Below are positions 45,501-64,000 of a stretch of 64,000 nucleotides of DNA, piece after piece; the first letter of the stretch is position 1; each line of letters opens with the position of its first letter. The position numbers were made by a program, and so were the translations under genes. Under the pieces are notes generated by a model, which saw nothing but the letters and a program-made list of their open reading frames with translations, was not told the DNA's origin and did not search any database. The stretch comes from Klebsormidium nitens. Taxonomy: Eukaryota > Plantae > Klebsormidiophyceae. Location of the stretch: the NCBI GenBank assembly GCA_000708835.1, contig DF237242.1, forward strand, positions 45,950 to 109,949, read 5' to 3'.

Positions 45501-48500
45501 TCATGCTGAGCTACAGCATGAGCGCACACTTTCTTGGGCTGTCTTTCTCCTATCAGAGTCTGTTTGGTTTCTTTTAAACTCTTTGTTTCACTACTTCACT
45601 TTTTCGCACTTTGTAAGGAGTTTCTGCACATGCCGCTGACCGACTTCGAGGCCAAAGTGCAGGTGCTGAGCTACAGCCTGGCCGTCCACTTTCGTGGGCT
45701 ATCTTTTCTCCTTCGAAATCTTTCGTTCCACTCTGAACTCTCCCTTTCACTCACTTTACTCGTTTGCACTTTTTCCAGGAGTTTCTGCACATGTTGCTGA
45801 CGGAGTTCGAGGCCAAGGTGCACGTGCTGAGCTACAGCATGGGCGCGCGCGCGGTGGTGGGCGCACTGGACCTGCTCGAGGAAGAAGTGCTCGCGCTCGA
45901 TGATAAGCTCAAAAAGGACGGCAGCCACCTGAAGGCCGCCCTGCAGGACAAGCTGCGGAGCGTCGTCACCCGGTGCGTCTGTGTAAAACATTCTTGAACT
46001 TTGCTTCTGACTTTCAGGGACTTTCGGATAAGCTTCTCAGGAATGTAGATTCTCGGCGAGGAGCTGCGGAGAAAGACAGCGAACACCGGGTGACGCTGCA
46101 GGACAAGCTGCGGAGCGTCGTCACCTGGTGCGTATGCTCTTAGTACTTGAGGTTTCCTGGACGCGGACTGTGAGCATTTGAGAACTGAAGCTTTTCGACG
46201 AAAGAGGTGACGAAGGGCGGCATCGGCCTCTGGGCCGCGTTGCAGCACAAGCTGCCGGGCTACTCGCCAGGTGCGACTGTCTTACATTGCAGGGTTTTGG
46301 GTTCTGAGGTTTGAGGTCTGAGGGTTGAAGGAGTCTGGGGTGTGAACACTAAGAACGCTTGCCGTAAAAAGGGTAACTTCAACGAGAAGCTAGAAAAGGA
46401 CAGGAAAAAGCTGACGGCCGCGCTGGTGATTACGTGGGGGCGCTTCGGTTCCACGCCCCATGCTTCCAGCTGGCTCTCAATCCTTTTCTTTTGAATCTCA
46501 GCCTTTCTTATATCAGTCATTTGTTTGTTTGCGCCACCTGTCTCTTCTTCTCCAGAGAAAGGGGAGGGTTCGAAGTCGAAGCGAACAAGTATGTCGTCTA
46601 TGCAAGATCCGGTGCAATATCCTCTGATTGTGTAGACTTTTCGCCGACGCTGCGATGAATCGGCGTTTTCTATTCAGTTGACGCTGACGTATTGTTTCGA
46701 ACGACCTCGAAGCATCGTCGATCTGGGGATAACGTGACTCATCAGGCACTCTACACGTCCACGAAAGGCAATGAGCTACTCTTGCAAAGTGCCTGCAAAT
46801 CTGACGGGTAACGTCCTCTGCTTTCAGTGGCGAAGAAGCGGCCGCCGGAATGAAAGTCGGGGTGCGGGAGCTTGGCAACATCCTCGCGAGAGAACGTGAC
46901 CTCCTCAAAGAGAAGGCCGCGTCCCTGCGGGGCGCACCGCTAAACCTGAACGACGGGCCTGACATAAACCCCAGCGGAGACTTGGGTTACGGGCAGCATC
47001 GAGAGGCTGGTTATGGTGAGGGTTTGCCGCTGACTGGAGACGCCGGCGATGAAGAGTCGCCCAGAAGTCGGGGGGCAGTGACGAGTTCGGGGCGGGCAGA
47101 GGAACGGGGTTTGGGGCTAACGACTGCGAAGGTTAAGGAGGGGTTTAGCGAGGAGCGGGTTAAGGAGTGGGAGGCGTTGCGCGCCAAGCTGGGGCATCTG
47201 ATATTCATGGCGCCCGACGAAGAAGTCGAGAGGTTTCGTCACACTGCGCGACGGTGGACCCAGAGTTTGCGGAACCGGGTTAGCGGCCGAACCCAGGGGG
47301 CCTCCGAGGAGGTCAAGGAGCGGGTTAGGACGGATCTAGAGGCAGACGGGCCGCAGGCAGTGGAAGAGGCGGCAAAGCGGGGGGGCGCACGGCCGGATGA
47401 CGTCATCATCGCTGCGAAAGTTGCGGGATTGTCGGCGGAGATCCCGCGTCTCATGAGTTCACCCGCCGTGCTTCAGGGCGACGATAACCATGCGAACGAG
47501 CGATGCGTGCCGCCTGCGCTACACCTCGCGCTTACGAGTACGAGCGTCTCGGTCACCCCCCGCTTTTCCGGCTGGCAAAACGTTCTGGGCAGCGATGGAC
47601 CCGAATCCGGCAAAGGCGCGGAATGCGAACAAGAGGAAGACATTCCAGGGAAGCCCGTGGGAGACGGCGCAGAGAATGTGCTCATGGTCTCGCCGAGTCG
47701 CCTGACTACCATCTTCTCGGGCAAGGCGCTCGATCTGAACCCACGGAACTTCGTCAAACCCGTCGGTAATTTGACAACGGACCTTAGTCAAAGCCTTCCC
47801 CACGAGACTGCCTCCGAGACTCCCGCCCTCCTTCTTCCGAGAACGCAGTCCACCCCAGTCATCTACCCGGCGGGAGCCGATGCCCCGCCCAGATCGCCGT
47901 CCGCTGACGTCATCCCTCCCTCTGATGATGTCTTCCCGCCGGCTGCTGACGTTATCTCCCCTGGAGTGAGCGAGAGGGCCTTCCCTGGCTATCCGAGGTC
48001 GTTCCAAGGAAGCTTCCGCCCTAGTTCGCCTTCTGCCAGCTCAACGTCGAGCCGCACCCCCTCCAGGTAACCTCTCAAGAAAGCGAGATTTCTTCTTTTT
48101 AAGGGTTCTCATCAGCTGGGTGAACCACACAAAACAGCGGGACATGGGCTGCTTCCAAGGGTAATATGCTTCTTGAGGCCAACTAGTAAAATTGTCTCCG
48201 CTTTAGTGTCGCTCTCTGCCTTCTTTTTGGGACGAGTGTTCTATTGCGGTCTTCCTTTGTTTCTCCCTTGAATCCATGATTCGTCGCATATACCATTTTG
48301 TCTGCGTTCGAGTTCGCATTGCTTTTCTTTATTTCTCCTTGCCAATGTAGTTTTCTGCCGTTGTACTACTTCGTTACTTGGATCATGACCTTTTCATATC
48401 CCTCGTCCTGCGCAGCTTGCCAACTCTGCCCGTCCGTTCGCAATTTGTAGTCTGTCGCCTGCTTGCAATCATTCGCCGCCTCCTCTTGTCGTTTTGATCT

Positions 48501-50265
48501 CTTCCTTCCCCTTGTTAAGCTCGTTTTGCACGTCGTTTCGTTGTGATGTTTCATCGCGTCAGTCCGTCTTTACTGTAGCTCCTCATACTATTTTATTTAT
48601 TTGTAGCGTCCCCGTATTGCCGCTCCGCTCCTTTTTCTTATTCCGCCGTTCCGCCCCGCAGGTCCTCCTCCTCGACGGACTTGGTCGGCGAGGAGCTCCA
48701 GCAGGCCCTGTTGTGGGAGCACTTGCACGCCGCCGCCCTGGACGGCTACAGCGACCGCAGCAGCGACGCCTCCAGCAGGGCCTCCAGCCGCGCCCCTTCC
48801 CGAACGCCCTCGCTCGCCGACCTTGGCAGCAGTCACAGCAGCTTCAACGATCCCACTCAGAACGGTGCGCCGATCTGCGGAGAGGAATCCCTGTCGACAG
48901 CTGGCGACCGGCATTTGACAGCTGGCGGCGATAGAGTTACATTGTCGGGAGAAGTTGGCGTGGAAGAGGGCACGAGCGGTGTGACAGCCGGCGTGAGCCC
49001 CGAAGTGACAGCTGGTGCGGGCGTCGCGACAGCTGGCAAGCCGGGGGAAAAGGCCCTGTGGCGGAGAAAGTCGCTCCCCGCCATGGCCCTTCACCTGTCC
49101 AGCTCGGCCCCGGTCCTGGCCCCTGGCAGCCTCGAGTGGCGCTTCCTGCACCGGCCAACCGCAGAACGAAACGTGTCCACGTCAAGACCCTCGCCGCCCG
49201 CGTCCTTCGATGACGTCAGCGCGTCCGAAGACGACGTCAGCGCGACGGGCCCGCGCTTCAGCCTGTACACGTCACAGAGCGATTGGGCTCTGAAGCTGGC
49301 GGGGCTCGCGACGACCAAGCCGTGGGCGCGCGGGCTCGCGCGCATGGTTGCGTTTGGGGACCCGGGGAAGAACGACCTGGGGCGGCGGGTCGGCGCGGTT
49401 CTGCTGGTGGAGGAAGGGTACGAAACGATCGATGCGACGGAGGTCAGCATCGGGTCCAGGAACATGGGGCACCACTACTTGTTCCACAGGTGAGGACTGC
49501 GTCAGCCTGTAAGTAAACGATCATTTTTGGTCTAAACGTTCTGCAGTTGGTGAGTCATTGTTCCTATGTCTTCTTGGATACTTTCAGTATTGCTAGGGTT
49601 TACAATACTGGGCGCAAAGGCGATTAGCCAGGTGCAAATCCAGGTTGTTGCAGTTTTTGTTTGAATCGATTAAACCTTGCTTGTTGGTAAAAGGGATGAC
49701 ACATGCCCGTCCTTTGGGCGTTCAGACCCGCCCATCCGAAAAGTCCGCCTTGTGCAAAGATGGGTGCAGTCGCCTGCTCCGGTTTCAAAAGATCTGTTCT
49801 GCTTGCCTTGAGCCCTAACGTGCCGTCGCTTGTATGAAATGGTCGGTGGTACATTGGGAACTGTAAATTTTACAAGCAAAGGTTGCTAAGAAAATCAGAC
49901 TGTTAATCGCGGAGGCAAACTTCTTCAGGCCACGGCGAGAAGACCAGGAATGCTGGAAGAATGTCAAAACACAGACTGAAGTTGCCCAACCGCCACACTT
50001 ACACCTCAGGTGCATTCTGGAGGACATCACGCACCTGCTGAGTGGGGCGAACGCGCACAAGCGGCGCTTCGAGGCGACCACTCCCGACGGGAAGGTCTAC
50101 TGGAAGATTGAGCGTGGCGACTACAAGCCCGCAGCTGCGCCGTCCCCCGCGCTGTATCCGACTTGGAGCACTGTACATATGATGGAGAGCACAAAAGTGG
50201 CCCCCGCGGAGCGACAACTCCTCTTTTTCACCAGCGACGAAGTTGCAATCAACTTCAACTATTGA
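42509..50265 (+). CDS. Gene B: DUF900-type alpha/beta-hydrolase with a large low-complexity insertion (5' exons unresolved)
   Basis: Exons 42509-42662, 43462-43751, 44217-44265, 44816-44938, 45779-45972, 46828-48066, 48662-49489 and 50010-50265 join in frame. DUF900 hallmarks: VPIFYATNR, IIVFVHG, VVFSWPS..Y..D, VHVLSYSMG, FSLYTSQSDWAL, IDATEV..GHHY. Confidence 0.85.
42956..43373. mobile_element. 418-bp non-autonomous TIR element (MITE) in a gene B intron; 3-bp TSD, PIF/Harbinger-like
   Basis: Left end GGCTACGCGAAG(TTGG)TCGATATGGGGATTCCGGTCC (42956-42992) is the reverse complement of 43341-43373 apart from a 4-nt indel. TTG flanks both sides (42953-55, 43374-76). AT-rich interior. The superfamily call is inferred from TSD length and GGC ends. 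Confidence 0.85.
45295..45778 (+). repeat. Three degenerate tandem copies (~157-161 bp period) of the acceptor and 5' end of the catalytic exon of gene B
   Basis: GAGTTTCTGCACATG..CTGAC.GA.TTCGAGGCCAA.GTGCA.GTGCTGAGCTACAGC recurs at 45305, 45461 and 45618; real exon at 45779. Confidence 0.9.
46050..46280 (+). repeat. Two degenerate copies of the 3' end and donor of the same gene B exon
   Basis: CTGCAGGACAAGCTGCGGAGCGTCGTCACC(C/T)GGTGCGT at ~46096 differs at one base from the real exon end at 45941-45978. Weaker copy TTGCAGCACAAGCTGCCGGGC..CCAGGTGCG at ~46240. Confidence 0.9.
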
Positions 50266-51400: not shown

Positions 51401-51758
51401 AGTCCAATGAGACTGGCTGGCAACAGGCATCGATCCTCCAAGTTTATAGTTGGTTTTTAAGGCAATGCGCACTGATGCCAGCTCTTCTTTTCAGGTACGT
51501 TTTTCTCGAGCGTGCTCCGGGCCAATCTATAATACAGCTCAACGCTAGTGTCGTTGCAACCTACCGGCTACTAGGCTAGTGTCAGTTCCTACATTCACTG
51601 CTGAAATGTCCAGCGTTGATCGCCTTGCGCATGGGCCGTAAACCCCTAGGCCCGCATTCGTGCCCTTCAAAAAATGGGCACAAGGCGTGAACGTAGCTAA
51701 AGTCTACGGCATCGTATTAAGCTCGTGAAAACGCCTTTACACCTTCGGCAGGCCTGCT

Positions 51759-54700
51759 TTACTCTTGTACCGACTCTAGGATCTGCTCGAGCACGACCAT
51801 GATGTGCTCAAAAGACGGCCGCTCTGACGGCTCCTGCTTCCAGCAGTCTTTGACCAGTTGCACCAACCGGGGATCCCATTCGTCCACAGGGATTGATAAC
51901 CGGATGCCGGCCGCGACCGACGTGATGATCTGCGGTTCGTGGACACCCTGGAAAGCAATAACGTTGAGCGTCAAACGAAGGTTGAAACCACGCAAATGCC
52001 AAACAATACAACTCCTCGCACCTTCAATGCCCCTCAAGAAAGTGGACGGACTTTGTGCTTGCTGAACGACCGGCTTCCAAGCCACTTTGACCCGTTCGTG
52101 GACGCCCAGATTTCTCGTGCTCTGCAGCAAGCACATGCTGCTTTCATTGACAACCAAGGGCCAGTGATAAAGCTCGGACGGCACACCCTCACGCGTCCTC
52201 TGGCGAAAGCCCTGTAAGATTGACTACCGTAAGTGTAAAAACTTTCAAGGACTTTGACACACAAGCTGGTAAGAGGAATCTCACCGTCCAGGGGACCCGC
52301 CGCGTGGCGAGCTCCCACAGGATCACCCCGAAGCTGTACACGTCACCCTTTTCGTCCACGAGCGACGGGTCCTTGAACGCCTCCGGCGCCATGTACGACA
52401 CGGTGCCCGCCGCGCGCAGCGTGGACAGCGGCTTGTTGCCCGACGTCGTGTTCAGCAGGCGGGACTGCCCGAAGTCGCACACCTGCGGGGAAAAGGGTAG
52501 ATTTCGATGAGGCACTTTGAGTCAGAGCTGTGGATAATCTCTGCTTTTGGGCACGACAAACTTCGGTCGTGGCCAGCGTGCAGATTGGGAAGAGTCGCAA
52601 AGCTGCAGAGAAAGGGCTGGGGGAACCATTGGCCAAGCACTAGTTCCGGAAAGATAGACTTCTTTTGACGTCATCTCCTGTTGAGGACAACAGCGGCCCC
52701 AGTTCTTTGCATTGCGTTCAGCAGGCGAGAATTCATGAAGTCGCACACTTGACAAAACAGAGCACAGTACCGGGGTCAGCAACGTGTTTGGAGGGGGATG
52801 CCGCGGGGACAACCAGTCTAAGCACAGGAAACCCTCAAGGGAAAGCCCATAAAATCAACGAGCAGCGTCTCCACTTCCATCTTTCAACTCTGAAACAAAC
52901 AAAAGTTGACTCAAAACGTTCACCAAGCAAAGCTACAAGTTTCCTTCTCGAACAAGGTACCTTCTAGCACAAGGCCAAACGATTCAACTTTAGAGCAAAC
53001 ATACGCGACCCACCTTGACTGTGTTATCCAGGCCGACCAGCAGGTTCCCCGTCTTGAGGTCGCGGTGCGCAATCCCCTGGAGGTGCAGGTAGCCCATGCC
53101 CCGTGCCACACCAAGCGCGTACTGCAGCCGTTGGGACAAACTGATGGGGGCCTTGCTGCTGTCTCGGTGGAGCACCTCGAATAGGCTGCCGCGGGCCAGA
53201 TACTCCGTCACGATGTACACCTGCGAACAGTGTAACAGCGTTTTTAACCAAGAACCCGAAAACCGAACGGGCTGCCGCGCACACGGTACTCAATCACCGT
53301 GTACAGCTGCAGTCATTGACCATGTGGCGACCTCGAACCTGGAAACTCTGAAACTAAGCAGGGACTGAACCACCCCCAGCAACTGTCCGAGCAGCATTCC
53401 ACAAGAGTACAACTCAGCTCTTCAACACCAGTTTGTGCTGAGTTTGCCTCGACACTTGCTTATTACGCTCCTCAGAGTGGCTTTTCGACCCCTAACTCCT
53501 GTAGCGCAATTCTAACAAGTCTCTTTGGAAACAGCAGAATGAGAGTTCCATGAAGGAGCGCATCAAGGGGGGGCGGCTAAGCTTCCCTGCAAGATAGGCA
53601 AGTTCAGTGGTCTGGATGCCCGAAGAAACGGACTCTTGCAGGTTTGACAGACAAAATCTGCGCTGTGCCCTCACCTCGCGCGACTGCGGCACCTCGACGG
53701 CCCCGATGAAGAGCACGACGTTGGGGTGGCGCAGCTTCCGCAGGATGACCACCTCGCGCCACACGGTGACCAGCGCCGCGCCCTCCACGCCGCTCATCAC
53801 CTTCACCGCGATGTCCGTGCCCAGCCACACCGCGTGGTACACCCGCCCGAACGAGCCCTGGAGCGGAAGGAACGTGTGAGGCGGAACTCAAGGAAGCCAT
53901 ACACCTGCTAAGATGGTATTTTCGTGTTTTTTAGACTCTCCACATCAGTGAGCAAGCCCAATGATGAACCCCAGGGGGAACAGACATTGAAGGCGAAGCG
54001 GAAGTATGCTGAGGGGCCTTGACGTTGGGTAAAGAAAGGGGAAGGATAGGCGTTTCGGAAGCAGGGGAGAACGGACTCTGGATCATGGTAAGAGCGTATG
54101 TCGAAGTTGCCGGCTTCATAGGAACTGCTAGACCTGTGCCGACACGTATGCCCACCTTATGTAAGGAAGGTCGGTTGGGTGTAGCTCACGAGGTCCATTC
54201 CGAAAGCGAAAATGGCAGATGGACAAACGTTACAAGGCACAGAATAACGCTTGGCATCCCACCCCACTTCCGACTCCCGAACCCCACCAAACGACCTCTT
54301 ACCTGTCCTAGGAGTGTCCCCAATTTGATATGCTCGGGATGCATCTGCAGCTCCCCCCCCATCATCCAACTCCGGTACTTGGCCGACCGCGCCTTCTCAT
54401 CCGACGCTGCCTTCTCCGCTTTCGCCTGCGGGCTAGCCCCTCCGTTAACCCCATTCTCAACCCCGTCCCGCCCCGACGTCTCCCCTGGGGGAGCGCCCCG
54501 ATCTGCCAGCCTTTCCGCCAGCGTTTCCACATCCTCTTCGTTGAAGATGTCCCCCCACACCGAACTCGCTCCCACCAGCGTGATCGGCGCCTTGCTCATA
54601 AACCCGGGAATTACATCCTTAACCTCGGGCTTAACCTGCGGGGGGTCTAAACCCAGGGTTTTCTCCACGCCCCCCGTCCCGGCCAGAGCGTTCAGCCGCG

Positions 54701-57700
54701 CCGCAGTGCTGCTTTCGAAGATCTTGGTGATGTCGCGCGCGGGGGCGCCGTCCGAGTGGAGACTATTGTGCCCCGACAGCACCGAGTGCTCCATCTCGTG
54801 CGCCAGCTCCTCGCTCCGTTGCAATGTCCGCACGACCAGGCTCATTTTGGGCCGGTCCAAAGCGTCCGCTTGCATACACATGGCCGCCGCTGCGACCGCA
54901 CCCGACAATTCCGCCTCCCGGCCCTCCCGCCCTAACCGCTTATCTAGCAACTCGGACGCATGCCCCGTGGTTAACAGGCTGACCGCGCGCTTGACTAGGT
55001 GGTTAGCGTTTTCGTTAGTGGAAAGGCCGCGCCCCCGAATAAGCTCGAAAACCAGCAGGCCGAACGCGAAAACGTCGCCCTCGATGCTCGCGAGCTGGGT
55101 TAGGTATCCGCTCAACCCCGCGTCGGCCAGAAACGCCTGCCCGTCCGAACTTAGGAGCACCCGGGACGAGTTAACCATCCCATGCGGCAAGACGGGTTTA
55201 TGCTCTTCGTGCAGGTACTCCAGAGCAAGCGCCACGTCCTTCATGACCCGCCACCGTTCCGCCCAGGTCATCACCTTCCCGGAATTACTGCTTGCCTCCG
55301 GCGCCCTCCCCGGCTTCTCACTCGGTCCCGGGGCTTCCTCTCCCCCCCGTTTCGTGCTTAACCGCTCCCCGCCCTCCGCAAGTCTCGCCTGAACGCTCAC
55401 CGGTTTGCTCGCGCCAGGCATGCTATGCACCAGGAAACAGGCCCGGTTCTTGGAAGGGTGGCACGCGGTCAACCGAGGGAGGTTGGGGTGGGACACCGTT
55501 TTCAACAACCCGACCGTCGCCATGAAGCTTTGCTTGTCCGCCCCCGCCCCTAGTTTGCTCCGTTTGCCGTGGGACGGGAGCTGTCGCACGAGGATGGCGC
55601 CCATGGACGCGAGGCCGGTGTAGAGGGATCCCCCTTCGCTCGGGCTGGCGTTGGAGAAGAGCTCCAGGATGCTGCCGCTGTTGGAGACGAGCAGTGTGAA
55701 CGTGTCCTGGTTGCCCTCCTGGTCCACGAGAAGGGGACGACCGTCCACGCAGTTCTTGGCGGCAAAGTTGCTGGTCAACTGCGGAGGAGGGGCGGGACAA
55801 CGGACTGTCAAAGCTCAGCATGATGCATCCATCGTGAGAAAGCTAATAGTCTACTCCAGGGGGGGACCTCAAGGTCGACAACAGCAGCTGAGACCCCGAA
55901 CATTATAGAAAAAGGCTCCAAAACGAGAATGATGAAGGAAAACGTTGTTGGTCACGACTGAGAGGAAAGCAATCACTTGGACGAGAAGAGCAGGTTTCTA
56001 TTCAAACCAGCAAGCTCCTGGAAGTGGCGCTTCAACTTTGGTAGCAATGGGGCTCTCGTACGAGTCCCATCTTTACCTCCGGGTCAGTTGGAAAAGATGA
56101 ATCAACTTTTTTAAGGGCAGTTGATACCAGGGGTTGTCTCCCCAGGGTTGTCTACATGGACCCTGTTGTGGTTGATGACGTGTTTAGTTGGCGAATTTCA
56201 TTGCTGAGAACACATTCTGAACATGGTTGCCACTAGAAAGAAAAGTCGAGCTGACGACATTCTTCTTCCTCATGTCGACACCTCAACTAGCAAATGTCAA
56301 CAGGGCACTCGCACCAACATGAAAAAGCAGCATGCAAACCCGAAACCTGAAACCTGAAACCTCTGCAGCTTACACCGATTGTGCTCAGCAACAGTGGAAC
56401 GAAAGTTGACTCAGCAAGGAAACTGTTTCCAATTGCAGTTCCGAAAGCCCCAGCAACAGACCAGGGTTTCAAGAAGCAAAACTTTAGTCAGAATGCGACC
56501 ACAAACATTTGAAGATCTGCAGTAAATTGTGGGGGGAAGGGGGTTCCAGAAACGGGAAAATATGAAGGAAACTTCTTACTGTGAGTATCTGAAATCGGAC
56601 AGATGCTTACAATCAGACACGATGACCAACCCTGCTCTAATGTTGTCTCATGAACCAATCTCTACAAGACTGCCTTCAGACTCGGATTGCCCTGCCCTAA
56701 ATACGCTTAACTCCCTCTTGACTAAGAACCTCTTAACCCCTAGGAAAACAAGACAACAACAAAGTTAATTGCCTCTCCAGCTTCACCCTACAGATTTTAC
56801 CTCGTCTGCAGTTCCCAATGACTGATATGCCATGTGCCAGATCGTTCATAAGAACGAAGGAGAAACGAAAGAAAACAGGGCGCCTCACCAGCTTGAGCCT
56901 GCTGACGCTGTACTGCGGCACGTCCATGGCCATGGCCTCCAGCTGCCACTTCTCAGTGGGCACCTCCCCCCCCGTCTGCTTCCGCCAGTGGTCGATCCGC
57001 CGCTTGCGCCGCAGGTACCACAAAAAGCCAATTGTACACACGACGGTCGCAACCCCGATCGTGATCACAATCATCACGTCGATCGCAACCACCTGGCCCC
57101 GCCGCGAGGCGGGCCCCTGGGGGGGGGTGCTCAGGGGGGGTTTTGGGTAGAATGGATAGGTCTCTGGGAGAAACCCCGCGTTGCGGGGGGTCACGCTGAC
57201 TTGCGCGTAGAAGTTGGCGCAGTCGGAGGCGGTTCGCTGGTCCGTGAGCGGGGCAAAGGGGACCCCCATGCAGTTCTGGCCATAGCGCACCAGCGGGGAG
57301 GCCAGCAGGGCGGGGGGGAGCGTCCCGTTGAGCCAGTTGTGCTCCAAGTTCAGCACAAGCGCCTCGCGGGGAACAGCTGACGTCACATTCCCCGCCGCTG
57401 ATGTCACATTCCCCGCCGTTGACGTCAGGTTGCTGATGACGGCTCCGTTGGTCGCTCGCCATGCGAGGCGGGAGCGGAGCAGGGAGTCGGGGAATGGGCC
57501 GCTGAGCGCGCAGTTATCCAGGTGCAGGTCGGTTAGGTTGACCAAGTTGCCCAGGGACTCCGGAATCGTGCCCTGGATGCCTGGGTTACGGCTCAAAGAC
57601 AGGGTTTGCAGGTGGGTTAACTGGCCCAGGCTGACCTCATTGATGTCTCCCACGATGTCGAAGTTGCTCAGCTCAAGCGAGATGACATGGGTGTTATAAA

Positions 57701-59955
57701 CCGGGTCACAAGTAACCCCCGGCCAACCGTGCTTGGAGCAGGGGTCGACGGTGGTCATCCAGCCGGGGGGGTACCAGCTGATGCGAATGCCCTCCAGGAT
57801 GCGCCGGTCGGGGCGGAACTGCGCGTACCACTCGTTGCACTTGTCTGTGGTTCGCTGGCCATTGTTGGTGTCGCGGTCCATGCAGTTGTTGGCAATCTGG
57901 GCAATGGTGAGACGGGTTTGGTTAGCCGTGACCACAAGTGGTTAGCTACCGCCGATGATTGGATGTGACCGCGTAAGCCTTGATTGCAGCGCTTTTCGTG
58001 GTTGTGACCTGGGGGGGGGGCATCACCGCCCAAAGCTTCAAATTTCATCTGATATGGAGCAAGTGATGAGATAACGACGATCAACAAGATTGACTTTGCA
58101 AACACGGTTCTGTTGAACTATGTTCTTGAAGACAGACAAAGTAACGAATCTGCCCAACCCACGGCGGCAGGTTCTTTCCAGCGTCACAACAGTTTTGAGG
58201 GCCACAAAGTCCAGAGGTTATTCATAGTGACATACATCTCAAAGTCCCCAAACCCAATCGAACTCCAAAAGTCCCCAACAAGCTTTGTCTGTCACACCAG
58301 TTTCCTTTTTGATACCGCCATCTAGATATCACCTTTCTTTAAGAATATCAAACACAAATGACAACACAACTAATCCATAAAAACTATCCAAACTGCTTCA
58401 ACATGTACCGCACAAGTAAATATAGAGCCACCACTGCAAGTCACTCTGCTTGAAAGTGATCTCATGGTTCCCTCCGGACCATTGAAAAGTTCTAGCACCT
58501 GCTTGCTTGGATGTGAACAGGTCCGCAAATCCGTGCCTTCACACTATCCCTTGCAACCTCCAACATCCATCCAGGCACTGAAAATAAACTCTCCACTAAT
58601 TGAACCGCGTGCTTGGCGTTACCAGAAGAACTGCCGCAGAAGCTCACCCGAGTCAAAACATGCAAAAACCTGCTCCCAGAACCATGAATGCCAAGAGTGG
58701 CGACACATGATGACACTGACACTCCCCCATGTCGGGAAAAACCCTGTGGCCGCTCTGCGGTGACAGATTCGCGCGGCCAAAGTTGAAACTCGTCAGGGAT
58801 GCATCACAAGTTGCCCCTTGATCACCGCACATGAAAGCAGATACGCCAACCCCCAGTCCCAATGTCAAGACCCAGGCCACCACCATGTCGCCACCATACA
58901 GCAAAGCACAAAGCTGAAATGGTGACATCAGCAACGCACAGATGACATCATGCGGGCCGCGCCCCAGGGCGCCTGGAAAGAAAAGCTGCCATGACCAAAG
59001 CGTCCTAAGCCCCACCAGATTGGTCGACACCGGATGTGTGTGGGATGGTTCCGTGCAAGAACCATCAAAGAGCGCCCCAACTTGAAGGGTCTTGATGTAG
59101 GAAAATGATAAAATAGAAAGTTATGTGCGTGAAGAAGAAACAGAGCATCAAAGGCCTCACCACAGCGGGGTATTTGATGAGGCCCGTGAGCGTCTCCGGC
59201 AGCAGGCCCGTCAGGTAGTTGTCCTGCACATCCAGGATGGCCAGCTGCGGCGGTGCGAAGCTGGGCGAGACAGGCCCGCTCAGGCAGTTCCCCGCGAGGT
59301 GTAGCTCCGTTAGGCTCTGACATGCGCTCAGCTCCGCGGGGATGGGGCCTGAGATGAACGCGTTCGACAGGCGGATCACTTTCAGGCGCTGCAGGTTCTG
59401 CAGAGAGTTTGGGAGCGTCCCGAAGAGCTTGGAGTTGTCGAGTGAGAGGCCCTGCAACGCGGCCAGGTTGCCGAGCTCAGGAGGGAGGGTTCCGGACAGC
59501 GGTTGAGACAGCCCCGCCGCAACATGGGGGTCGGAAATGGAGACGACGCGCGTCTCGTTCCCAACCATGCTGCAGAGAATGCCGGGCCAGGGAGGCGTGC
59601 CGTTGGCCACCCCGCAGGGCGGCACGGACACATTCCACAGGCGGGGGTCAAGGTTCCATGCCTTTCGGACCGCCAGGAGCGCGGCAAAATCCGTTGCATT
59701 CAGCGTGCCGGTCTGCCCGGTCAACTCCTCGGAAACCCTCCCCACGAGCTGCGCAACCGGAGTTACCGACTCCAAGTCTTCTGAAGCCAGAATGCGCCTG
59801 GGACGCTGCAACCCCCCTGCATCTGGCCTGCCCCCCAAAGTTGCAACAGGAATGAAGACTATAACAGCCACAAGGATCGTTGGCAAAGCGAACAGGGGTG
59901 CCGGTGGCCGGGCCGACGACCCTCGAGTCTTCCGGCTCCGACAGGGAACCGCCAT
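51759..59955 (-). CDS. Gene D: LRR receptor with duplicated LRR ectodomain, TM helix, RLK/Pelle-type pseudokinase and C-terminal Raf-like (TKL) kinase
   Basis: Eight in-frame GT-AG exons: 59955-59161, 58972-58940, 57896-56889, 55778-54303, 53857-53675, 53220-53014, 52482-52285, 51947-51759. Signal peptide; plant LRRs (LSGTLPPELGNLAALQGLSL, IQGTIPESLGNLVNLTDLHL); TM VVAIDVMIVITIGVATVVCTIGFLWYL then RRKRR. Kinase 1: YSVSRLKLLTSNF..TWAERWRVMKDVALALEYLH..HGMVNSSRVLL..DAG. Kinase 2: LGQGSFGRVYHAVWLGTDIAVK..HRDLKTGNLL..VKVCDFG..GTVSYMAPE..DVYSFGVILWELAT..RPSF. Confidence 0.92.
52484..52765 (-). repeat. Two degenerate copies (~130 bp period) of the acceptor and VCDFG exon start of gene D
   Basis: GTTCAGCAGGCGAGAATTCATGAAGTCGCACACTTG (52716) vs real GTTCAGCAGGCGGGACTGCCCGAAGTCGCACACCTG (52450). 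A weaker copy lies near 52575-52620. Confidence 0.75.
53263..53312 (-). repeat. Degenerate copy of the acceptor and VYIVTEY exon start of gene D
   Basis: GGCTGCCGCG..GTACTC..TCAC..TGTACAGCTGC vs real GGCTGCCGCG..ATACTCCGTCACGATGTACACCTGC at 53185-53224. Confidence 0.75.
57376..57427 (-). repeat. 21-bp coding tandem repeat in gene D (NLTSTAGNVTSAAGNVTSA)
   Basis: GCTGA(C/T)GTCACATTCCCCGCC twice plus a partial third copy; creates N-x-T sequons between LRRs. Confidence 0.9.
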
Positions 59956-61300: not shown

Positions 61301-64000
61301 ATGGCAGCCCCCACTGAGCACTACCAAGCCTCGGACCTAGCACAGATTGGACGCGGTCTGTATTACATAGGCGAGGAGTGCGTCCGACCGGCCGAGGTAG
61401 GGCAGTTTTCAAGCAACTGCATCACATGCAAGCAGCAAGTCTGGTCGAAAGCAGTCAGTACAGATGGAAGCTTGAGGCTGAGCCTGCGTGGCAGGAGCAC
61501 GATGAAGGGCTACCTCGTGAGCTGCAGCGTTCCAAAGAGCAAGCAAAAACGCCAACTCCTTTGCCTGGGCTGCGTGGACAAGCTTCGGATGGGGAAATTG
61601 AAGCTCAGCGCCGATGTAGAGAGCGTGAGTCTGTGCAACCGTGGTCATGGCCAGCAAGATGCGCTGATCTTTGAGCGCCAGGCCTCGGGGAGCTGGAGGC
61701 AAACGCTGGAGCTGACCAACGAGCTGCTCGAGGCTGTTGTGATTGCAAACGAGAGCACCGTGTCCCGAAAGAGGCCCAAAAAACCTGCAGCTGAGAGCGC
61801 ACTGAACAGGGGCATGCAAGCCGGCAGCCGCGCGCGCGAGATGCTGCCGGGTGAGTGCAACTATTTTCTTAATAGAACCTATGAAGATTTGCAATGCAAC
61901 AAGCGTCTGCCATCGATTGCGCTCGTCCCGCCAGATTTCAATGGACACACTGTCTGGCCTGTGCACATGCAAAAAGGGGGAGCACAAGGACCGACTACAT
62001 GCTGTTCATGGAATTTCTTGGAGCCCGTCACCCGAAAGGTGGGATCATGCGTAAGATCCCAGCTGCGATCTTGAGGTGCTCGTTCAGCTCCGACTGTGAG
62101 CAAGGCGTGAGGTTGTTTTCCGAGAGCGGTCAGGAAGTGTGCCTGAAAGATCTTGTTGGCACCTGCAGCCTGAGGCCCACATCGGCATCGCGGCCCAAGC
62201 TGCCCTCTTCCTGAGCGGCGTCCTGGAGGGCACGTGCCGCCTAGTTGTTCCTGCTGGAGTGGACGCCTATGCGGCCGCCCCCCTGCGGTTCTACATGACA
62301 TATTGGGATCACAACCGAGGGAGGCCGAAAGCGCTCGGCAAGCCCACCAAGGAGAAGGCGTTGCTCGAGGAATCCTGGTGGGATAGTCAGGGACACTTGA
62401 ACTGCTCATGCGATCGTGGCAGGCTGGCCAGGGACGCGCCTTGCGTTCACAAGCTGGTGCTTGCGGCCCTGGGTGCTTCGGGTTTGGAGCAGAGGGGCCT
62501 TCCCACGGCCAGGGAATTGGGAAGAGGAGCAGGGCTGGTCGAGCAGGTGGGTACGGACTCCACGGGGCGCTTCTTCGCAGCGAGGAGCAGCCCCAAAGGA
62601 GTCAGCCCCGCTCACAAGATGCTGCATCAAAGCATTGATGGGTTGTGGTACTGCCAGGGCAAGAGAGACGGCTGTCCGTCGCAGCACCACTGTAGCCACA
62701 TCATCGCGGCCGATCGGGCCGTCCGGGCGGGGCAGGTCCATTTTGCACAGGGGCTGCATCTTGGGCAGGATGCCCTAAGTAGAGCAAGGCAGTGGTTGGA
62801 GCGGTGGAACGGAGCGCTGCCGTTGCTCGGCAGGAGCAGGGAAGAGCGCGAGTTGCGTGCGAGCTACGAAGGGGCCGGCGAGGAGGAGGCGCACCTGATA
62901 GGCCTCATCTCCGGGCAGCGCCACGAGCCGGCCGGTTGCGCCGGTGTGGACTGCTTCTGTCAAGAGCATCAGCAATTGTTCGGGGCGGCTGAGCCGTCCA
63001 CATCAGCACTGCCCCGAGGGGTGGATGTGAGCGAGCCATGGACAGGGGTGCGTAGGAGCAAGCAGTGGTGGAGGAGTCATGCGGGTGAGGCTCCTTTGAC
63101 CGTGCGCGTGGCACCCCAGAGTGTGCGGGAGCCGCCCGCAGAGGCGTTGGGCAAGGAGGCGATCCGATGTTGGGTTTCCTCCTGCGGCAGCTGCACGTTG
63201 GAGGGTGCTCTACGGGGATGCCAGCATGAGGGGGTAGGAAGGGCCCCCGTCATGCTTCAGGAGACGCAGGCGGTCCAGGTGACCAAGCCGAAGCTGAGCC
63301 AGCTCAGCGACGCCCCGGACTTTCACGACCCGTGGGTGACGCGGCTGAGATGCGGACCGATTCGGGTCAGCAAGCTGGTGGGGAGAGACTTCCAGGAGCT
63401 AGGGGAACTCGGGGTGCTGAGCGCGCCATGCCCTCTCGAACCGCCTCCGTGCGGTGGGAAGTGAGTCGAGCTCTGGCAGGACGCGGTGGTGCATGCCTCG
63501 ACTTGGAGCCAGTCCGTGCGCACCAGAATGTACTCCTGCAAGTGCGCCAGGAAGCACAGTGTCCATTTCGATGGGGAGCACTTGGGGTTGTACGTCTGGA
63601 GCCGCCAGACGATTGTTGTACAGGAGAGCCTGCAACTGCTGCTCAAGCAGATGCAGCGGGGACAGTTGGGTTTTGGGGCGCTGCTGGAGGGGCAGCAGGA
63701 GGCCTTCCGGAGGGCACCAGAGTGCGCCGTCCTATCTGAAGAGACGTGGCGTAAGGCCAGCCTCGATTTCTTCCGGCTGGTGGGGCGGCAGATCCTGGAG
63801 TGCTGCAGCATATGCGGTCCCCATCCGGAGGTGAGCATCTTGATTGGAAGATGGAAAATGAGCCCCCTTGGATCTGCATAGCAATTGAGATGGTGGAGGC
63901 CCCTTGGATACTTTTTGAAAGGAGGGCTCAGGCCTTCACTGCTCAACTCAAAGCATGTCTTTGATGAAACCCGCAAGTCCTTGCACGTGTTGCTTCTACC
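61301..64000 (+). mobile_element. KDZ/Zisupton-like DNA transposon gene, N-terminal part (SWIM fingers + CxC4 cluster); continues beyond the window
   Basis: Spliced ORF: 61301-61850, ~61904-62106, 62169-~63830. SWIM motifs LNCSCDRGRLARDAPCVH and WYCQGKRDGCPSQHHCSH. CxC4-like PPPCGGK*VELW..MYSCKC..VHFDGEHLGLYVWS..LDFFRLV..CCSICGPHP. One in-frame TGA at 63462-63464. The DDE domain and element ends are not seen. Confidence 0.75.

What the first reader, a model, noticed from the sequence alone, without database searches (positions are those of the whole stretch)
51759..59955. Receptor fused to a pseudokinase plus Raf-like kinase: a single-chain LRR-to-MAP3K relay
Seen: after one TM helix come two kinase domains of different families. 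The first has RLK/Pelle landmarks but lacks catalytic motifs (HGMVNSSRV for HRDxKxxN, DAG for DFG, no APE, no clear Gly loop). The second is a complete CTR1/EDR1-type Raf-like kinase (GxGSFG, VAVK-like IAVK, HRDLK, DFG, APE). Established: plant LRR-RLKs normally carry one kinase, and Raf-like MAP3Ks are separate soluble proteins; known plant tandem kinases usually lack an LRR ectodomain. Inference: a JAK-like pseudokinase/kinase module wiring extracellular perception directly to a MAPK cascade in an alga.
Basis: partly seen in the sequence, partly recalled or inferred. Interest (0 to 1): 0.88.

Follow-up and report, generated by a model that had tools for sequence, protein, structure and literature searches.

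The report
Receptor fused to dead and live kinases
This alga makes one membrane protein joining an outside leucine-rich-repeat sensor, a dead receptor-type kinase and a working Raf-type kinase, a combination that land plants build from separate proteins and that I found described nowhere.

Summary
A seven-exon gene on the minus strand (ATG 59955, stop 51759-51761) encodes a 1351-aa protein. Its order is signal peptide, two capped LRR blocks, one TM helix, an RLK/Pelle-type pseudokinase (K1), a disordered linker, and a complete CTR1-like Raf-type kinase (K2).

RNA contigs from four runs in four studies show five GT..AG splice joints, including the disputed 54303/53857 joint. Together these give one open frame. 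The K1 exon itself encodes the first strand and half the glycine loop of K2, so this cannot be two genes.

K1 matches only RLK/Pelle/IRAK kinases by sequence and by predicted fold. It has lost the beta3 Lys, the alphaC Glu, the HRD Asp, the catalytic-loop Lys and Asn, the DFG Phe and most of its activation segment. K2 has CTR1 as its best solved relative in three of four exons and carries the Raf signature GTxxYMAPE.

Five related loci keep every domain and every intron position under purifying selection. They fall into two deep lineages.

The "MAPK cascade" and "JAK-like" parts are inference only. The scan had already found and followed up a paralogue elsewhere in this genome (s1-270336). Scan notes name the genome Klebsormidium nitens; I did not test that. 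My literature searches found no description of this architecture.

The parts
59161..59955 (-). Exon 1 (aa 1-265): start codon, N-terminal signal/hydrophobic segment, first LRRNT-type cysteine cap (59572-59622) and LRR block 1
   Evidence: ORF and Pfam LRRNT_2/LRR_1/LRR_8. Best PDB hits are plant LRR receptor kinases GSO1, FLS2 and MIK2. The GT donor follows 59161. The boundary is conserved in L004, L002 and L001.
56889..57896 (-). Exon 2 (aa 266-601): second cysteine cap (57708-57761), LRR block 2, TM helix (57012-57092), RRKRR stop-transfer and juxtamembrane segment
   Evidence: Pfam LRR. PDB hits to LRR-RK ectodomains. Hydropathy. The donor at 56889 is seen in RNA. The acceptor at 57896 is inferred from homology and a conserved AG.
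54777..55778 (-). Exon 3, first part (aa 602-935): K1, an RLK/Pelle-type pseudokinase with a degenerate glycine loop, Lys-to-Arg at beta3, HGM for HRD, DAG for DFG and a truncated activation segment
   Evidence: PDB phmmer finds only RLK/Pelle, IRAK and RIPK kinases. AF2 model with a confident core. The top 50 Foldseek hits are all RLK/Pelle/IRAK. Motifs are. dN/dS is 0.14.
54387..54776 (-). Exon 3, middle (aa 936-1065): low-complexity linker with one conserved motif, APITLVGASSVWGD (54549-54590)
   Evidence: pLDDT is below 50 in the AF2 model. The motif is conserved in four genomes and duplicated in L001. dN/dS is 0.11 against L004.
54303..54386 (-). Exon 3, end (aa 1066-1093): invariant pre-kinase segment KYRSWMMGGELQMHPEHIKLG plus the first strand and first half of the glycine loop of K2
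   Evidence: Invariant in all relatives. The GT donor follows 54303, and the joint to 53857 is seen in four RNA runs.
53675..53857 (-). Exon 4: K2 N-lobe (GSFG, IAVK, alphaC WREV)
   Evidence: The best PDB hit is CTR1 at 8.7e-12, against 1.5e-6 for RAF1, the next. RNA joints on both sides.
53014..53220 (-). Exon 5: K2 hinge to catalytic loop (HRDLKTGN)
   Evidence: The best PDB hit is CTR1 at 4.1e-13; no RLK is in the top 60. RNA joints.
52285..52482 (-). Exon 6: K2 DFG, activation segment and the Raf signature GTVSYMAPE (52381-52407)
   Evidence: The best PDB hit is CTR1 at 7.4e-14, against 4e-9 for the next and 1.3e-7 for BRI1. The signature definition comes from PMC5647345.
51759..51947 (-). 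Exon 7: K2 C-lobe end and stop codon (51759-51761); the 3' UTR runs on below 51700
   Evidence: The RNA joint 52285/51947 and contigs running past 51700. Pfam PK_Tyr_Ser-Thr C-terminal end.

Best explanation
This is a real, expressed gene for a type-I membrane receptor of 1351 aa.

Shown:
- One spliced reading frame joins a plant-type LRR ectodomain (two capped blocks), one TM helix, an RLK/Pelle-derived kinase domain that has lost nearly every catalytic residue and most of its activation segment, a disordered linker, and a C-terminal, fully equipped CTR1-type Raf-like kinase.
- All parts are kept under purifying selection in two old paralogous lineages.

Inferred mechanism:
- The ectodomain binds an extracellular ligand and drives dimerisation, with itself or with a co-receptor.
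- The dead RLK domain no longer signals by phosphotransfer. It serves as a folded scaffold or allosteric partner that positions and gates the Raf-like domain.
- The Raf-like domain is the only catalytic output. It is activated by proximity-driven dimerisation and trans-phosphorylation, as Raf-family kinases generally are.
- In effect, the receptor-plus-cytosolic-kinase relay that land plants assemble from separate proteins is hard-wired into one chain here.
- The substrate is unknown. It could be a MAP2K, a SnRK2-type kinase or something else.
For: One transcript:
- Five GT..AG joints appear in RNA contigs of four runs from four studies, with intron depth at or below 1% of exon depth. One contig runs from the K1 exon through the TM exon and another 1230-1280 nt upstream.
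- The joined exons give a frame without stops.
- Exon 3 encodes both K1 and the start of K2.

K1 is a dead RLK:
- PDB sequence hits are CARK1, NFR5, PBL2, BAK1, BIR2, CERK1, FLS2 and IRAK1.
- All top 50 fold hits are RLK/Pelle/IRAK.
- The same degenerate motifs occur in all relatives.

K2 is a Raf-like kinase with every catalytic motif:
- CTR1 is the best solved relative in three of four exons, by margins of about 10^2 to 10^5.
- It carries the Raf signature GTxx(W/Y)MAPE.
- All catalytic motifs are invariant in four genomes.

Selection and conservation:
- dN/dS against the closest orthologue is 0.04 for K2, 0.14 for K1, 0.04 for LRR block 1 and 0.11 for the linker.
- The same seven exons with the same AG/GT sites occur in L004 and L002. 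The L001/L005 lineage has them plus one extra intron.
Against: - No biochemical or genetic data exist for this protein. Ligand, dimerisation, K1-K2 contact and substrate are all inferred.
- K1 keeps the DFG Asp and a glycine-rich remnant, so nucleotide binding or atypical activity is not excluded.
- The RNA graph breaks at 54325-54354 in all four runs. The K1 and K2 parts therefore sit on two contigs that overlap by 30 nt rather than on one.
- K2-exon contigs are 1.3-1.45 times deeper than the K1 contig. This could be 3' bias or words shared with a paralogue, but a minor K2-only transcript is not excluded.
- The placement of K2 within Raf subgroups was not tested by a tree.
Confidence: 0.6

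Rival explanations
1. K1 acts as an autoinhibitory clamp on K2, as JAK JH2 does on JH1. Ligand binding would release the inhibition rather than simply bring K2 domains together.
For: The order is the same: pseudokinase, then kinase at the C-terminus. K1 is under purifying selection. A conserved motif and a predicted helix (E3 residues 450-472) ahead of the invariant pre-K2 segment could mediate docking.
Against: The K1-K2 linker is about 130 residues long, mostly disordered and poorly conserved between the two lineages (25-30% identity, dN/dS 0.6-0.7). JH2 and JH1 arose by duplication, whereas K1 and K2 belong to different families. No interface could be modelled, because the spliced protein could not be handed to the structure tool.
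Confidence: 0.2
2. The protein is an immune-type tandem kinase. K1 would be an integrated decoy that pathogen effectors target, and K2 would report the attack, as proposed for wheat and barley tandem kinase proteins.
For: Tandem kinase-pseudokinase proteins are a known plant family with immune roles, and some include Raf-like MAP3K-type domains (PMC6170490). K1 and the ectodomain evolve faster than K2.
Against: Described TKPs have no TM or receptor domain. Here dN/dS is well below 1 everywhere, and LRR block 1 is as constrained as K2. No NLR partner or pathogen context is known for this alga.
Confidence: 0.07
3. K1 is not dead. It binds nucleotide and has atypical kinase activity, so the protein is a true dual kinase.
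For: The DFG Asp is retained in three of four sequences, and a GGS-x-Y-x-G remnant is conserved. At least one plant 'pseudokinase', the Raf-like ILK1, has confirmed activity (abstract of PMC9403797).
Against: The beta3 Lys, alphaC Glu, HRD Asp, catalytic-loop Lys and Asn are all lost together, and almost the whole activation segment with APE is missing. This holds in both lineages. The L001 lineage has also lost the Gly of DFG (it reads DFC).
Confidence: 0.08
4. The locus also, or mainly, yields separate products: a receptor pseudokinase and a soluble Raf-like kinase made from an internal start.
For: The RNA graph breaks at 54325-54354, and K2-exon contigs are 1.3-1.45 times deeper than the K1 contig in all four runs.
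Against: The K2 domain is incomplete without the end of exon 3, which supplies its first strand and the first glycine of the loop. The 54303/53857 joint is present at full depth in all four runs. The intron has under 1% of exon depth, and no molecule ends were reported there. The exon structure is conserved in five related loci.
Confidence: 0.05

Closest known systems
Plant LRR receptor kinases with pseudokinase domains (BIR2, STRUBBELIG family), and the LysM receptor NFR5
   Same: Signal peptide, plant-type LRR ectodomain, single TM helix and an RLK/Pelle-fold cytosolic domain that is catalytically dead. As in NFR5, the activation segment is largely missing; NFR5 is the second-best PDB sequence hit, and BIR2 and NFR5 are among the fold hits.
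   Different: Those receptors end after the pseudokinase and signal through separate partner kinases. This protein carries its own active kinase, of another family, on the same chain.
Plant Raf-like MAPKKKs of the CTR1/EDR1 type
   Same: K2 has CTR1 as its best solved relative, carries the Raf signature GTxx(W/Y)MAPE, and sits at the C-terminus behind a long regulatory region, as Raf members typically do (PMC5647345).
   Different: Known members are soluble proteins whose N-terminal regions hold EDR1, PAS or PB1-type domains (my own knowledge; PB1 is also named). Here the N-terminal region is a complete transmembrane receptor plus a pseudokinase.
ETR1-CTR1 and ETR-type histidine kinase-ARK complexes
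   Same: The logic is the same: a membrane receptor with a kinase-like cytosolic domain holds and controls a CTR1/B3-type Raf-like kinase. The moss ETR-HK upstream of the B3 RAF can be replaced by a Klebsormidium homologue (10.64898/2026.05.21.726866).
   Different: There, two separate proteins bind non-covalently, the receptor domain is a histidine-kinase fold, and the ligand site lies in the membrane (my own knowledge for ETR1). Here it is one chain, with an RLK fold and an LRR ectodomain.
Plant tandem kinase proteins (WTK1/Yr15, RPG1)
   Same: Two kinase domains in one chain, one active and one dead. About 40 of 92 arose by fusion of different kinase families, and a few involve Raf-like MAP3K-type domains (PMC6170490).
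   Different: TKPs have no TM helix, no ectodomain and no other conserved domain, and they are cytoplasmic. They are mostly built from RLK/Pelle-derived domains.
Janus kinases (JH2-JH1) and KSR-RAF pairs
   Same: A pseudokinase is placed next to an active kinase whose activity depends on dimer geometry. In JAKs the pseudokinase is also N-terminal to the kinase.
   Different: These are animal proteins, not transmembrane, and unrelated in origin. JH2 and JH1 are duplicates of one another. Regulation of K2 by K1 has not been shown here.

Membership tests
LRR-RLK (RLK/Pelle receptor kinases) | Signal peptide, extracellular plant-type LRRs with cysteine caps, and a single TM helix | tested here: met
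   Pfam LRRNT_2/LRR_1/LRR_8. PDB hits are GSO1, FLS2, MIK2 and PEPR1. Two hydrophobic segments and RRKRR after the second.
LRR-RLK (RLK/Pelle receptor kinases) | The cytosolic kinase domain belongs to the RLK/Pelle (IRAK) family | tested here: met
   All 54 PDB sequence hits are plant RLK/RLCK, IRAK, RIPK or other TKL kinases, with plant RLKs on top. All top 50 Foldseek hits are RLK/Pelle/IRAK. No tree was built.
LRR-RLK (RLK/Pelle receptor kinases) | One kinase domain, at the C-terminal end of the protein | tested here: not met
   A second kinase domain, of another family, follows after a linker of about 130 aa.
Pseudokinase | Loss of the beta3 Lys, the HRD Asp and/or the DFG Asp | tested here: met
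   LVRQ for VAVK, HGM for HRD, the catalytic-loop Lys and Asn lost, DAG (DFC in L001) for DFG, and the activation segment cut to 13 residues. This is conserved in four genomes. Biochemical inactivity was not tested.
Plant Raf-like MAPKKK | Signature GTxx(W/Y)MAPE in the kinase domain | tested here: met
   GTVSYMAPE at aa 1249-1257. The signature is as given in PMC5647345.
Plant Raf-like MAPKKK | C-terminal kinase domain behind a long N-terminal regulatory region | tested here: met
   K2 occupies aa 1075-1351, with the stop right after the domain.
Plant Raf-like MAPKKK | The kinase domain groups with CTR1/EDR1 or other Raf groups in a phylogeny | tested here: inconclusive
   Only per-exon ranking against solved structures was possible. 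CTR1 is first in three of four exons, and tyrosine kinases are first in the last exon. No tree was built, because the spliced domain has no reference and no Raf reference sequences could be fetched.
Plant Raf-like MAPKKK | Phosphorylates a MAP2K | not testable with these tools
   This needs an in vitro kinase assay.
Tandem kinase proteins (TKP) | Two kinase domains in tandem, one a putative pseudokinase | tested here: met
Tandem kinase proteins (TKP) | No other conserved domain, no TM helix, cytoplasmic | tested here: not met
   An LRR ectodomain and a TM helix are present. The definition comes from PMC6170490.
Janus kinase | FERM-SH2-JH2-JH1 non-receptor tyrosine kinase | tested here: not met
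   There are no FERM or SH2 hits. The protein is transmembrane, and K1 and K2 are of different families. The resemblance is in domain order only.

The most novel reading that the evidence does not exclude
In an early-branching streptophyte lineage, an LRR receptor, an RLK-derived pseudokinase and a CTR1-type Raf-like kinase work as one covalent signalling unit, with the dead RLK domain directly gating the Raf-like domain. That would show that RLK and Raf-like kinase domains can couple physically without RLCK intermediates. It would also offer a natural single-chain model for how plant receptor complexes switch on Raf-like kinases, whose upstream activators are largely unknown in land plants.
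Probability: 0.35. Interest if true: 0.8.

Novelty: new variant of a known kind. Interest (0 to 1): 0.66.

Why it matters
How plant cell-surface receptors reach Raf-like kinases is an open question. The 2026 preprint 10.64898/2026.05.21.726866 states that the upstream activators of Arabidopsis B3 RAFs remain unknown. RAF phosphorylation in the rapid auxin response depends on the receptor kinase TMK1, by a route that is not resolved (PMC10783624).

A natural protein that ties an LRR receptor, a dead RLK domain and a CTR1-type kinase into one chain is a ready-made test object. Its K1-K2 interface, activation mechanism and substrates can be studied with a single construct. It also widens the known range of receptor-kinase and tandem-kinase architectures at the base of the streptophytes.

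The family looks narrow. Only four close relatives of the K1 exon turned up in the two protein collections searched: three among 1.84 billion cluster representatives and one more among 5.8 billion clusters. It may therefore be a lineage-specific experiment rather than an ancestral state.

Tried and rejected
1. Two genes wrongly merged. Rejected on the RNA joints, the shared exon and the conserved structure.
2. K2 as a duplicated RLK domain. Rejected: K1 and K2 are about 20% identical, and CTR1, not any RLK, tops the PDB lists.
3. Long multi-kinase hits from the representative search (P0008, P0009, P0011, P0018, P0027, P0032), checked as possible further examples. They are chains of two to five ordinary RLK-type kinase domains, some with lectin, S-locus or EF-hand domains, and show no Raf-type fusion. 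They look like merged tandem arrays.
4. A scan of JGI metagenome contigs with the K1-exon alignment found nothing.
5. The search for homologous proteins with the K1 exon found only P0001, P0002, P0003 and P0151. Full-length annotated proteins lie outside its length range, so this says nothing about them.
6. A whole-domain phylogeny and a structure of K2 or of K1+K2 were not done. The spliced protein has no reference and I did not type it in.
7. The Cell 2024 Klebsormidium phosphoproteome was searched for tryptic peptides of this protein, but no supplementary files are held.
8. Gong and Han 2021 (the RLK census of streptophyte algae) is not held, so I could not check whether it mentions the second kinase domain.
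9. Six literature searches and eight papers searched for relevant terms gave no description of an LRR-TM-pseudokinase-Raf architecture.
10. The ESM Atlas look-ups added only generic kinase and RLK labels.

Full report
**Gene model**

The finding lies on the minus strand. ORF listing and Pfam scans showed LRR pieces at 59955-59065 and 57935-56733, a weak PK_Tyr_Ser-Thr match in the long ORF 55811-54186, and four short kinase pieces further down.

I laid Logan contigs of four RNA runs on 51700-57699. The runs came from four studies and carry two organism labels. They gave five joints with CT..AC ends on the plus strand, which is GT..AG on the gene strand. After the stated cut shifts, the introns are 51948-52284, 52483-53013, 53221-53674, 53858-54302 and 55779-56888.

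Exon depth was 65-580 and intron depth 0-6. The one exception is the last intron, where a retained form runs at about 4% of exon depth. Joining the exons gives one frame with no stop until 51759-51761.

One contig per run (3497-3542 nt) runs from 54325 through the K1 exon and the TM exon, and then 1230-1280 nt further upstream. That length fits exon 2 up to 57896, exon 1 (795 nt) and a 5' UTR of 240-285 nt, with no room for another exon.

The exon 1/exon 2 joint itself (59161/57896) lay outside the stretch I could lay. It is supported by gap-free colinear tblastn coverage and by AG/GT sites at the same codon in three other genomes.

The full model has seven exons and 4056 nt, and encodes 1351 aa.

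**Why it cannot be two genes**

Exon 3 ends with ...KYRSWMMGGELQMHPEHIKLGTLLGQ, and exon 4 begins GSFGRVYHAVW...IAVKV. The first strand and the first glycine of the K2 glycine loop are therefore encoded in the same exon as K1. Three database proteins that are prokaryote-style ORF calls on related genomic contigs all end with this same segment and then read into the intron.

One caveat: the RNA graph breaks at 54325-54354 in every run, so K1 and K2 sit on two contigs that overlap by 30 nt. This is the most conserved stretch of the gene. A 31-mer shared with a paralogous transcript would explain the break, but I could not test that.

**Ectodomain and membrane**

- Both ectodomain exons hit only plant LRR receptor-kinase ectodomains in the PDB, with GSO1, FLS2, MIK2 and PEPR1 on top.
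- Each LRR block is preceded by a cysteine cap of the W..PC..W.G(I/V).C type.
- Hydropathy shows an N-terminal hydrophobic segment and one TM helix at aa 534-560, followed by RRKRR.
- Nine N-glycosylation sequons lie before the TM helix.

**K1**

- The exon 3 translation hits 54 PDB sequences. All are plant RLK/RLCK, IRAK, RIPK or other TKL kinases. The best are CARK1 (5xd6), the pseudokinase NFR5 (8s79), PBL2 and BAK1.
- An AlphaFold2 model built on a 64-row alignment has a confident kinase core (pLDDT around 90 over residues 50-340 of the exon) and a disordered linker.
- Its 50 best Foldseek matches in the PDB are all RLK/Pelle or IRAK kinases, including the pseudokinases BIR2 and NFR5.

K1 has these changes:
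- LVRQ where active kinases have VAVK
- FMATV where the alphaC Glu should be
- HGMVNSSR for HRDxKxxN
- DAG for DFG
- only 13 residues between DAG and the alphaF motif DVFAFG, so the activation loop, the P+1 loop and APE are gone, as in NFR5
- a conserved insert of about 35 residues in place of a normal glycine loop

The same defects occur in all four full-length relatives.

**K2**

- CTR1 is the best solved relative for the N-lobe exon (8.7e-12, against 1.5e-6 for RAF1).
- CTR1 is also best for the catalytic-loop exon (4.1e-13, against 6.6e-11 for DLK, with no RLK in the top 60).
- CTR1 is best again for the DFG-APE exon (7.4e-14, against 4e-9 for the next and 1.3e-7 for BRI1). In that exon 37 of 65 aligned positions are identical to CTR1.
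- The last exon, which is the least informative, hits tyrosine kinases first.
- K2 has GQGSFG, IAVK, the alphaC Glu, HRDLKTGN, DFG and GTVSYMAPE. The last matches the Raf-specific signature GTxx(W/Y)MAPE as given in PMC5647345.
- K1 and K2 align only over their C-lobes, at 20% identity.

I could not build a tree with Raf reference sequences, so placement within the Raf subgroups is open.

**Relatives and selection**

A search of 1.84 billion cluster representatives with exon 3 gave only three true relatives below 1e-30. Everything else was generic RLK similarity at 34% identity or less. The 90%-cluster search added one more relative.

Their contigs all carry LRR exons upstream and kinase exons downstream:

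| Locus | Source |
|---|---|
| L004 | a Logan DNA run |
| L002, L003 (identical) | JGI samples 3300060284 and 3300060285 |
| L001 | JGI sample 3300060284 |
| L005 | JGI sample 3300060285 |

I built intact full-length models for L004, L002 and L001. They are 90%, 72% and 51% identical to the window protein. Every intron sits at the same position, and L001 has one extra intron just before HRD. L005 is colinear with L001 at about 90-98% identity.

There are thus two old lineages, and both keep the whole architecture.

Against L004 (dS about 0.45), dN/dS by region is as follows:

| Region | dN/dS |
|---|---|
| K2 | 0.04 |
| TM and juxtamembrane | 0.04 |
| LRR block 1 | 0.04 |
| Linker | 0.11 |
| K1 | 0.14 |
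| LRR block 2 | 0.18 |

The dead domain is therefore maintained, not decaying.

**Organism and earlier scan notes**

Notes from this scan name the genome Klebsormidium nitens (s1-261757 and others). I did not test this myself. The RNA runs carry two organism labels across 2012-2024, which would fit the renaming of the sequenced strain from K. flaccidum to K. nitens; that is my inference.

The scan had already found and followed up a paralogue with the same architecture on another piece of this genome (s1-270336). That agent also found the combination described nowhere.

**Mechanism**

Shown: the architecture, its expression, its conservation, the loss of catalytic residues in K1 and their retention in K2.

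Inferred: ligand-driven dimerisation of the ectodomain brings the cytosolic parts together. K1 acts as a folded scaffold or allosteric partner, and K2 is the sole catalytic output. The closest functional parallels are pseudokinase receptors that signal through partner kinases, and the ETR-type receptor/CTR1-ARK pairs.

A JAK-like autoinhibitory reading is possible but has no evidence beyond domain order. The long, poorly conserved linker does not favour a fixed interface.

The claim that the output is a MAPK cascade is not supported. The family is called MAP3K by classification, but known plant Raf-like substrates include SnRK2s (the subject of PMC7712759) and EIN2 (my own knowledge).

**Novelty**

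Reviews and censuses that I could search describe Klebsormidium RLKs as ectodomain, TM helix and one kinase domain (PMC10868138). The tandem-kinase survey states that none of its 92 proteins had any other conserved domain (PMC6170490). The RAF papers I searched do not mention a receptor-linked RAF.

The key algal RLK census, Gong and Han 2021, was not available, so prior mention there cannot be excluded.

I file this as a new variant of known kinds (LRR-RLK, Raf-like kinase, tandem kinase). It is real and conserved but lineage-restricted, with its function still to be shown.

Noticed in passing
window 53264-53310 and 52716-52751: Two introns hold decayed copies of the downstream exon's 5' edge together with its acceptor site. 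The first is a 74% copy of 53178-53224 (exon 5 edge), 86 nt upstream. The second is an 83% copy of 52450-52485 (exon 6 edge), 266 nt upstream. This fits the 'exon-edge echo' phenomenon noted elsewhere in this genome (s1-267523, s1-290839). RNA shows no use of the copies.
   Followed up: partly
window 57376-57417: A 21-nt tandem duplication inside exon 2 encodes two copies of a 7-aa unit (AGNVTSA) and adds an N-glycosylation sequon. The stretch is variable in L004 and absent in L002.
   Followed up: partly
window 54325-54354: In all four RNA runs the assembly graph breaks at the same 30-nt overlap, inside the invariant pre-K2 segment. K2-exon contigs are 1.3-1.45 times deeper than the K1 contig. 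Words shared with a paralogous transcript, or 3' bias, could explain this. It was not tested.
   Followed up: no
window 51948-52284: The last intron is retained in a minor RNA form: contigs span 51919-52313 at depth 16-20, against about 440-550 for the spliced form.
   Followed up: no
L001:14248-14853 and L005:15369-15955: The second paralogue lineage has an extra intron that splits exon 5 just before the HRD motif. It also has a duplicated copy of the conserved linker motif (PPMTMQGA.SIWG) in exon 3.
   Followed up: partly
window 54019-55392 (+): A 457-aa ORF lies antisense to the K1 exon. It is most likely a shadow ORF of a G+C-rich coding exon. I did not search it against any library.
   Followed up: no
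window 46850-48070, 48681-49493, 61301-62074, 62139-63464 (+): The largest neighbouring ORFs on either side of the gene have no Pfam match at E <= 0.001. What flanks the receptor gene is unknown.
   Followed up: partly
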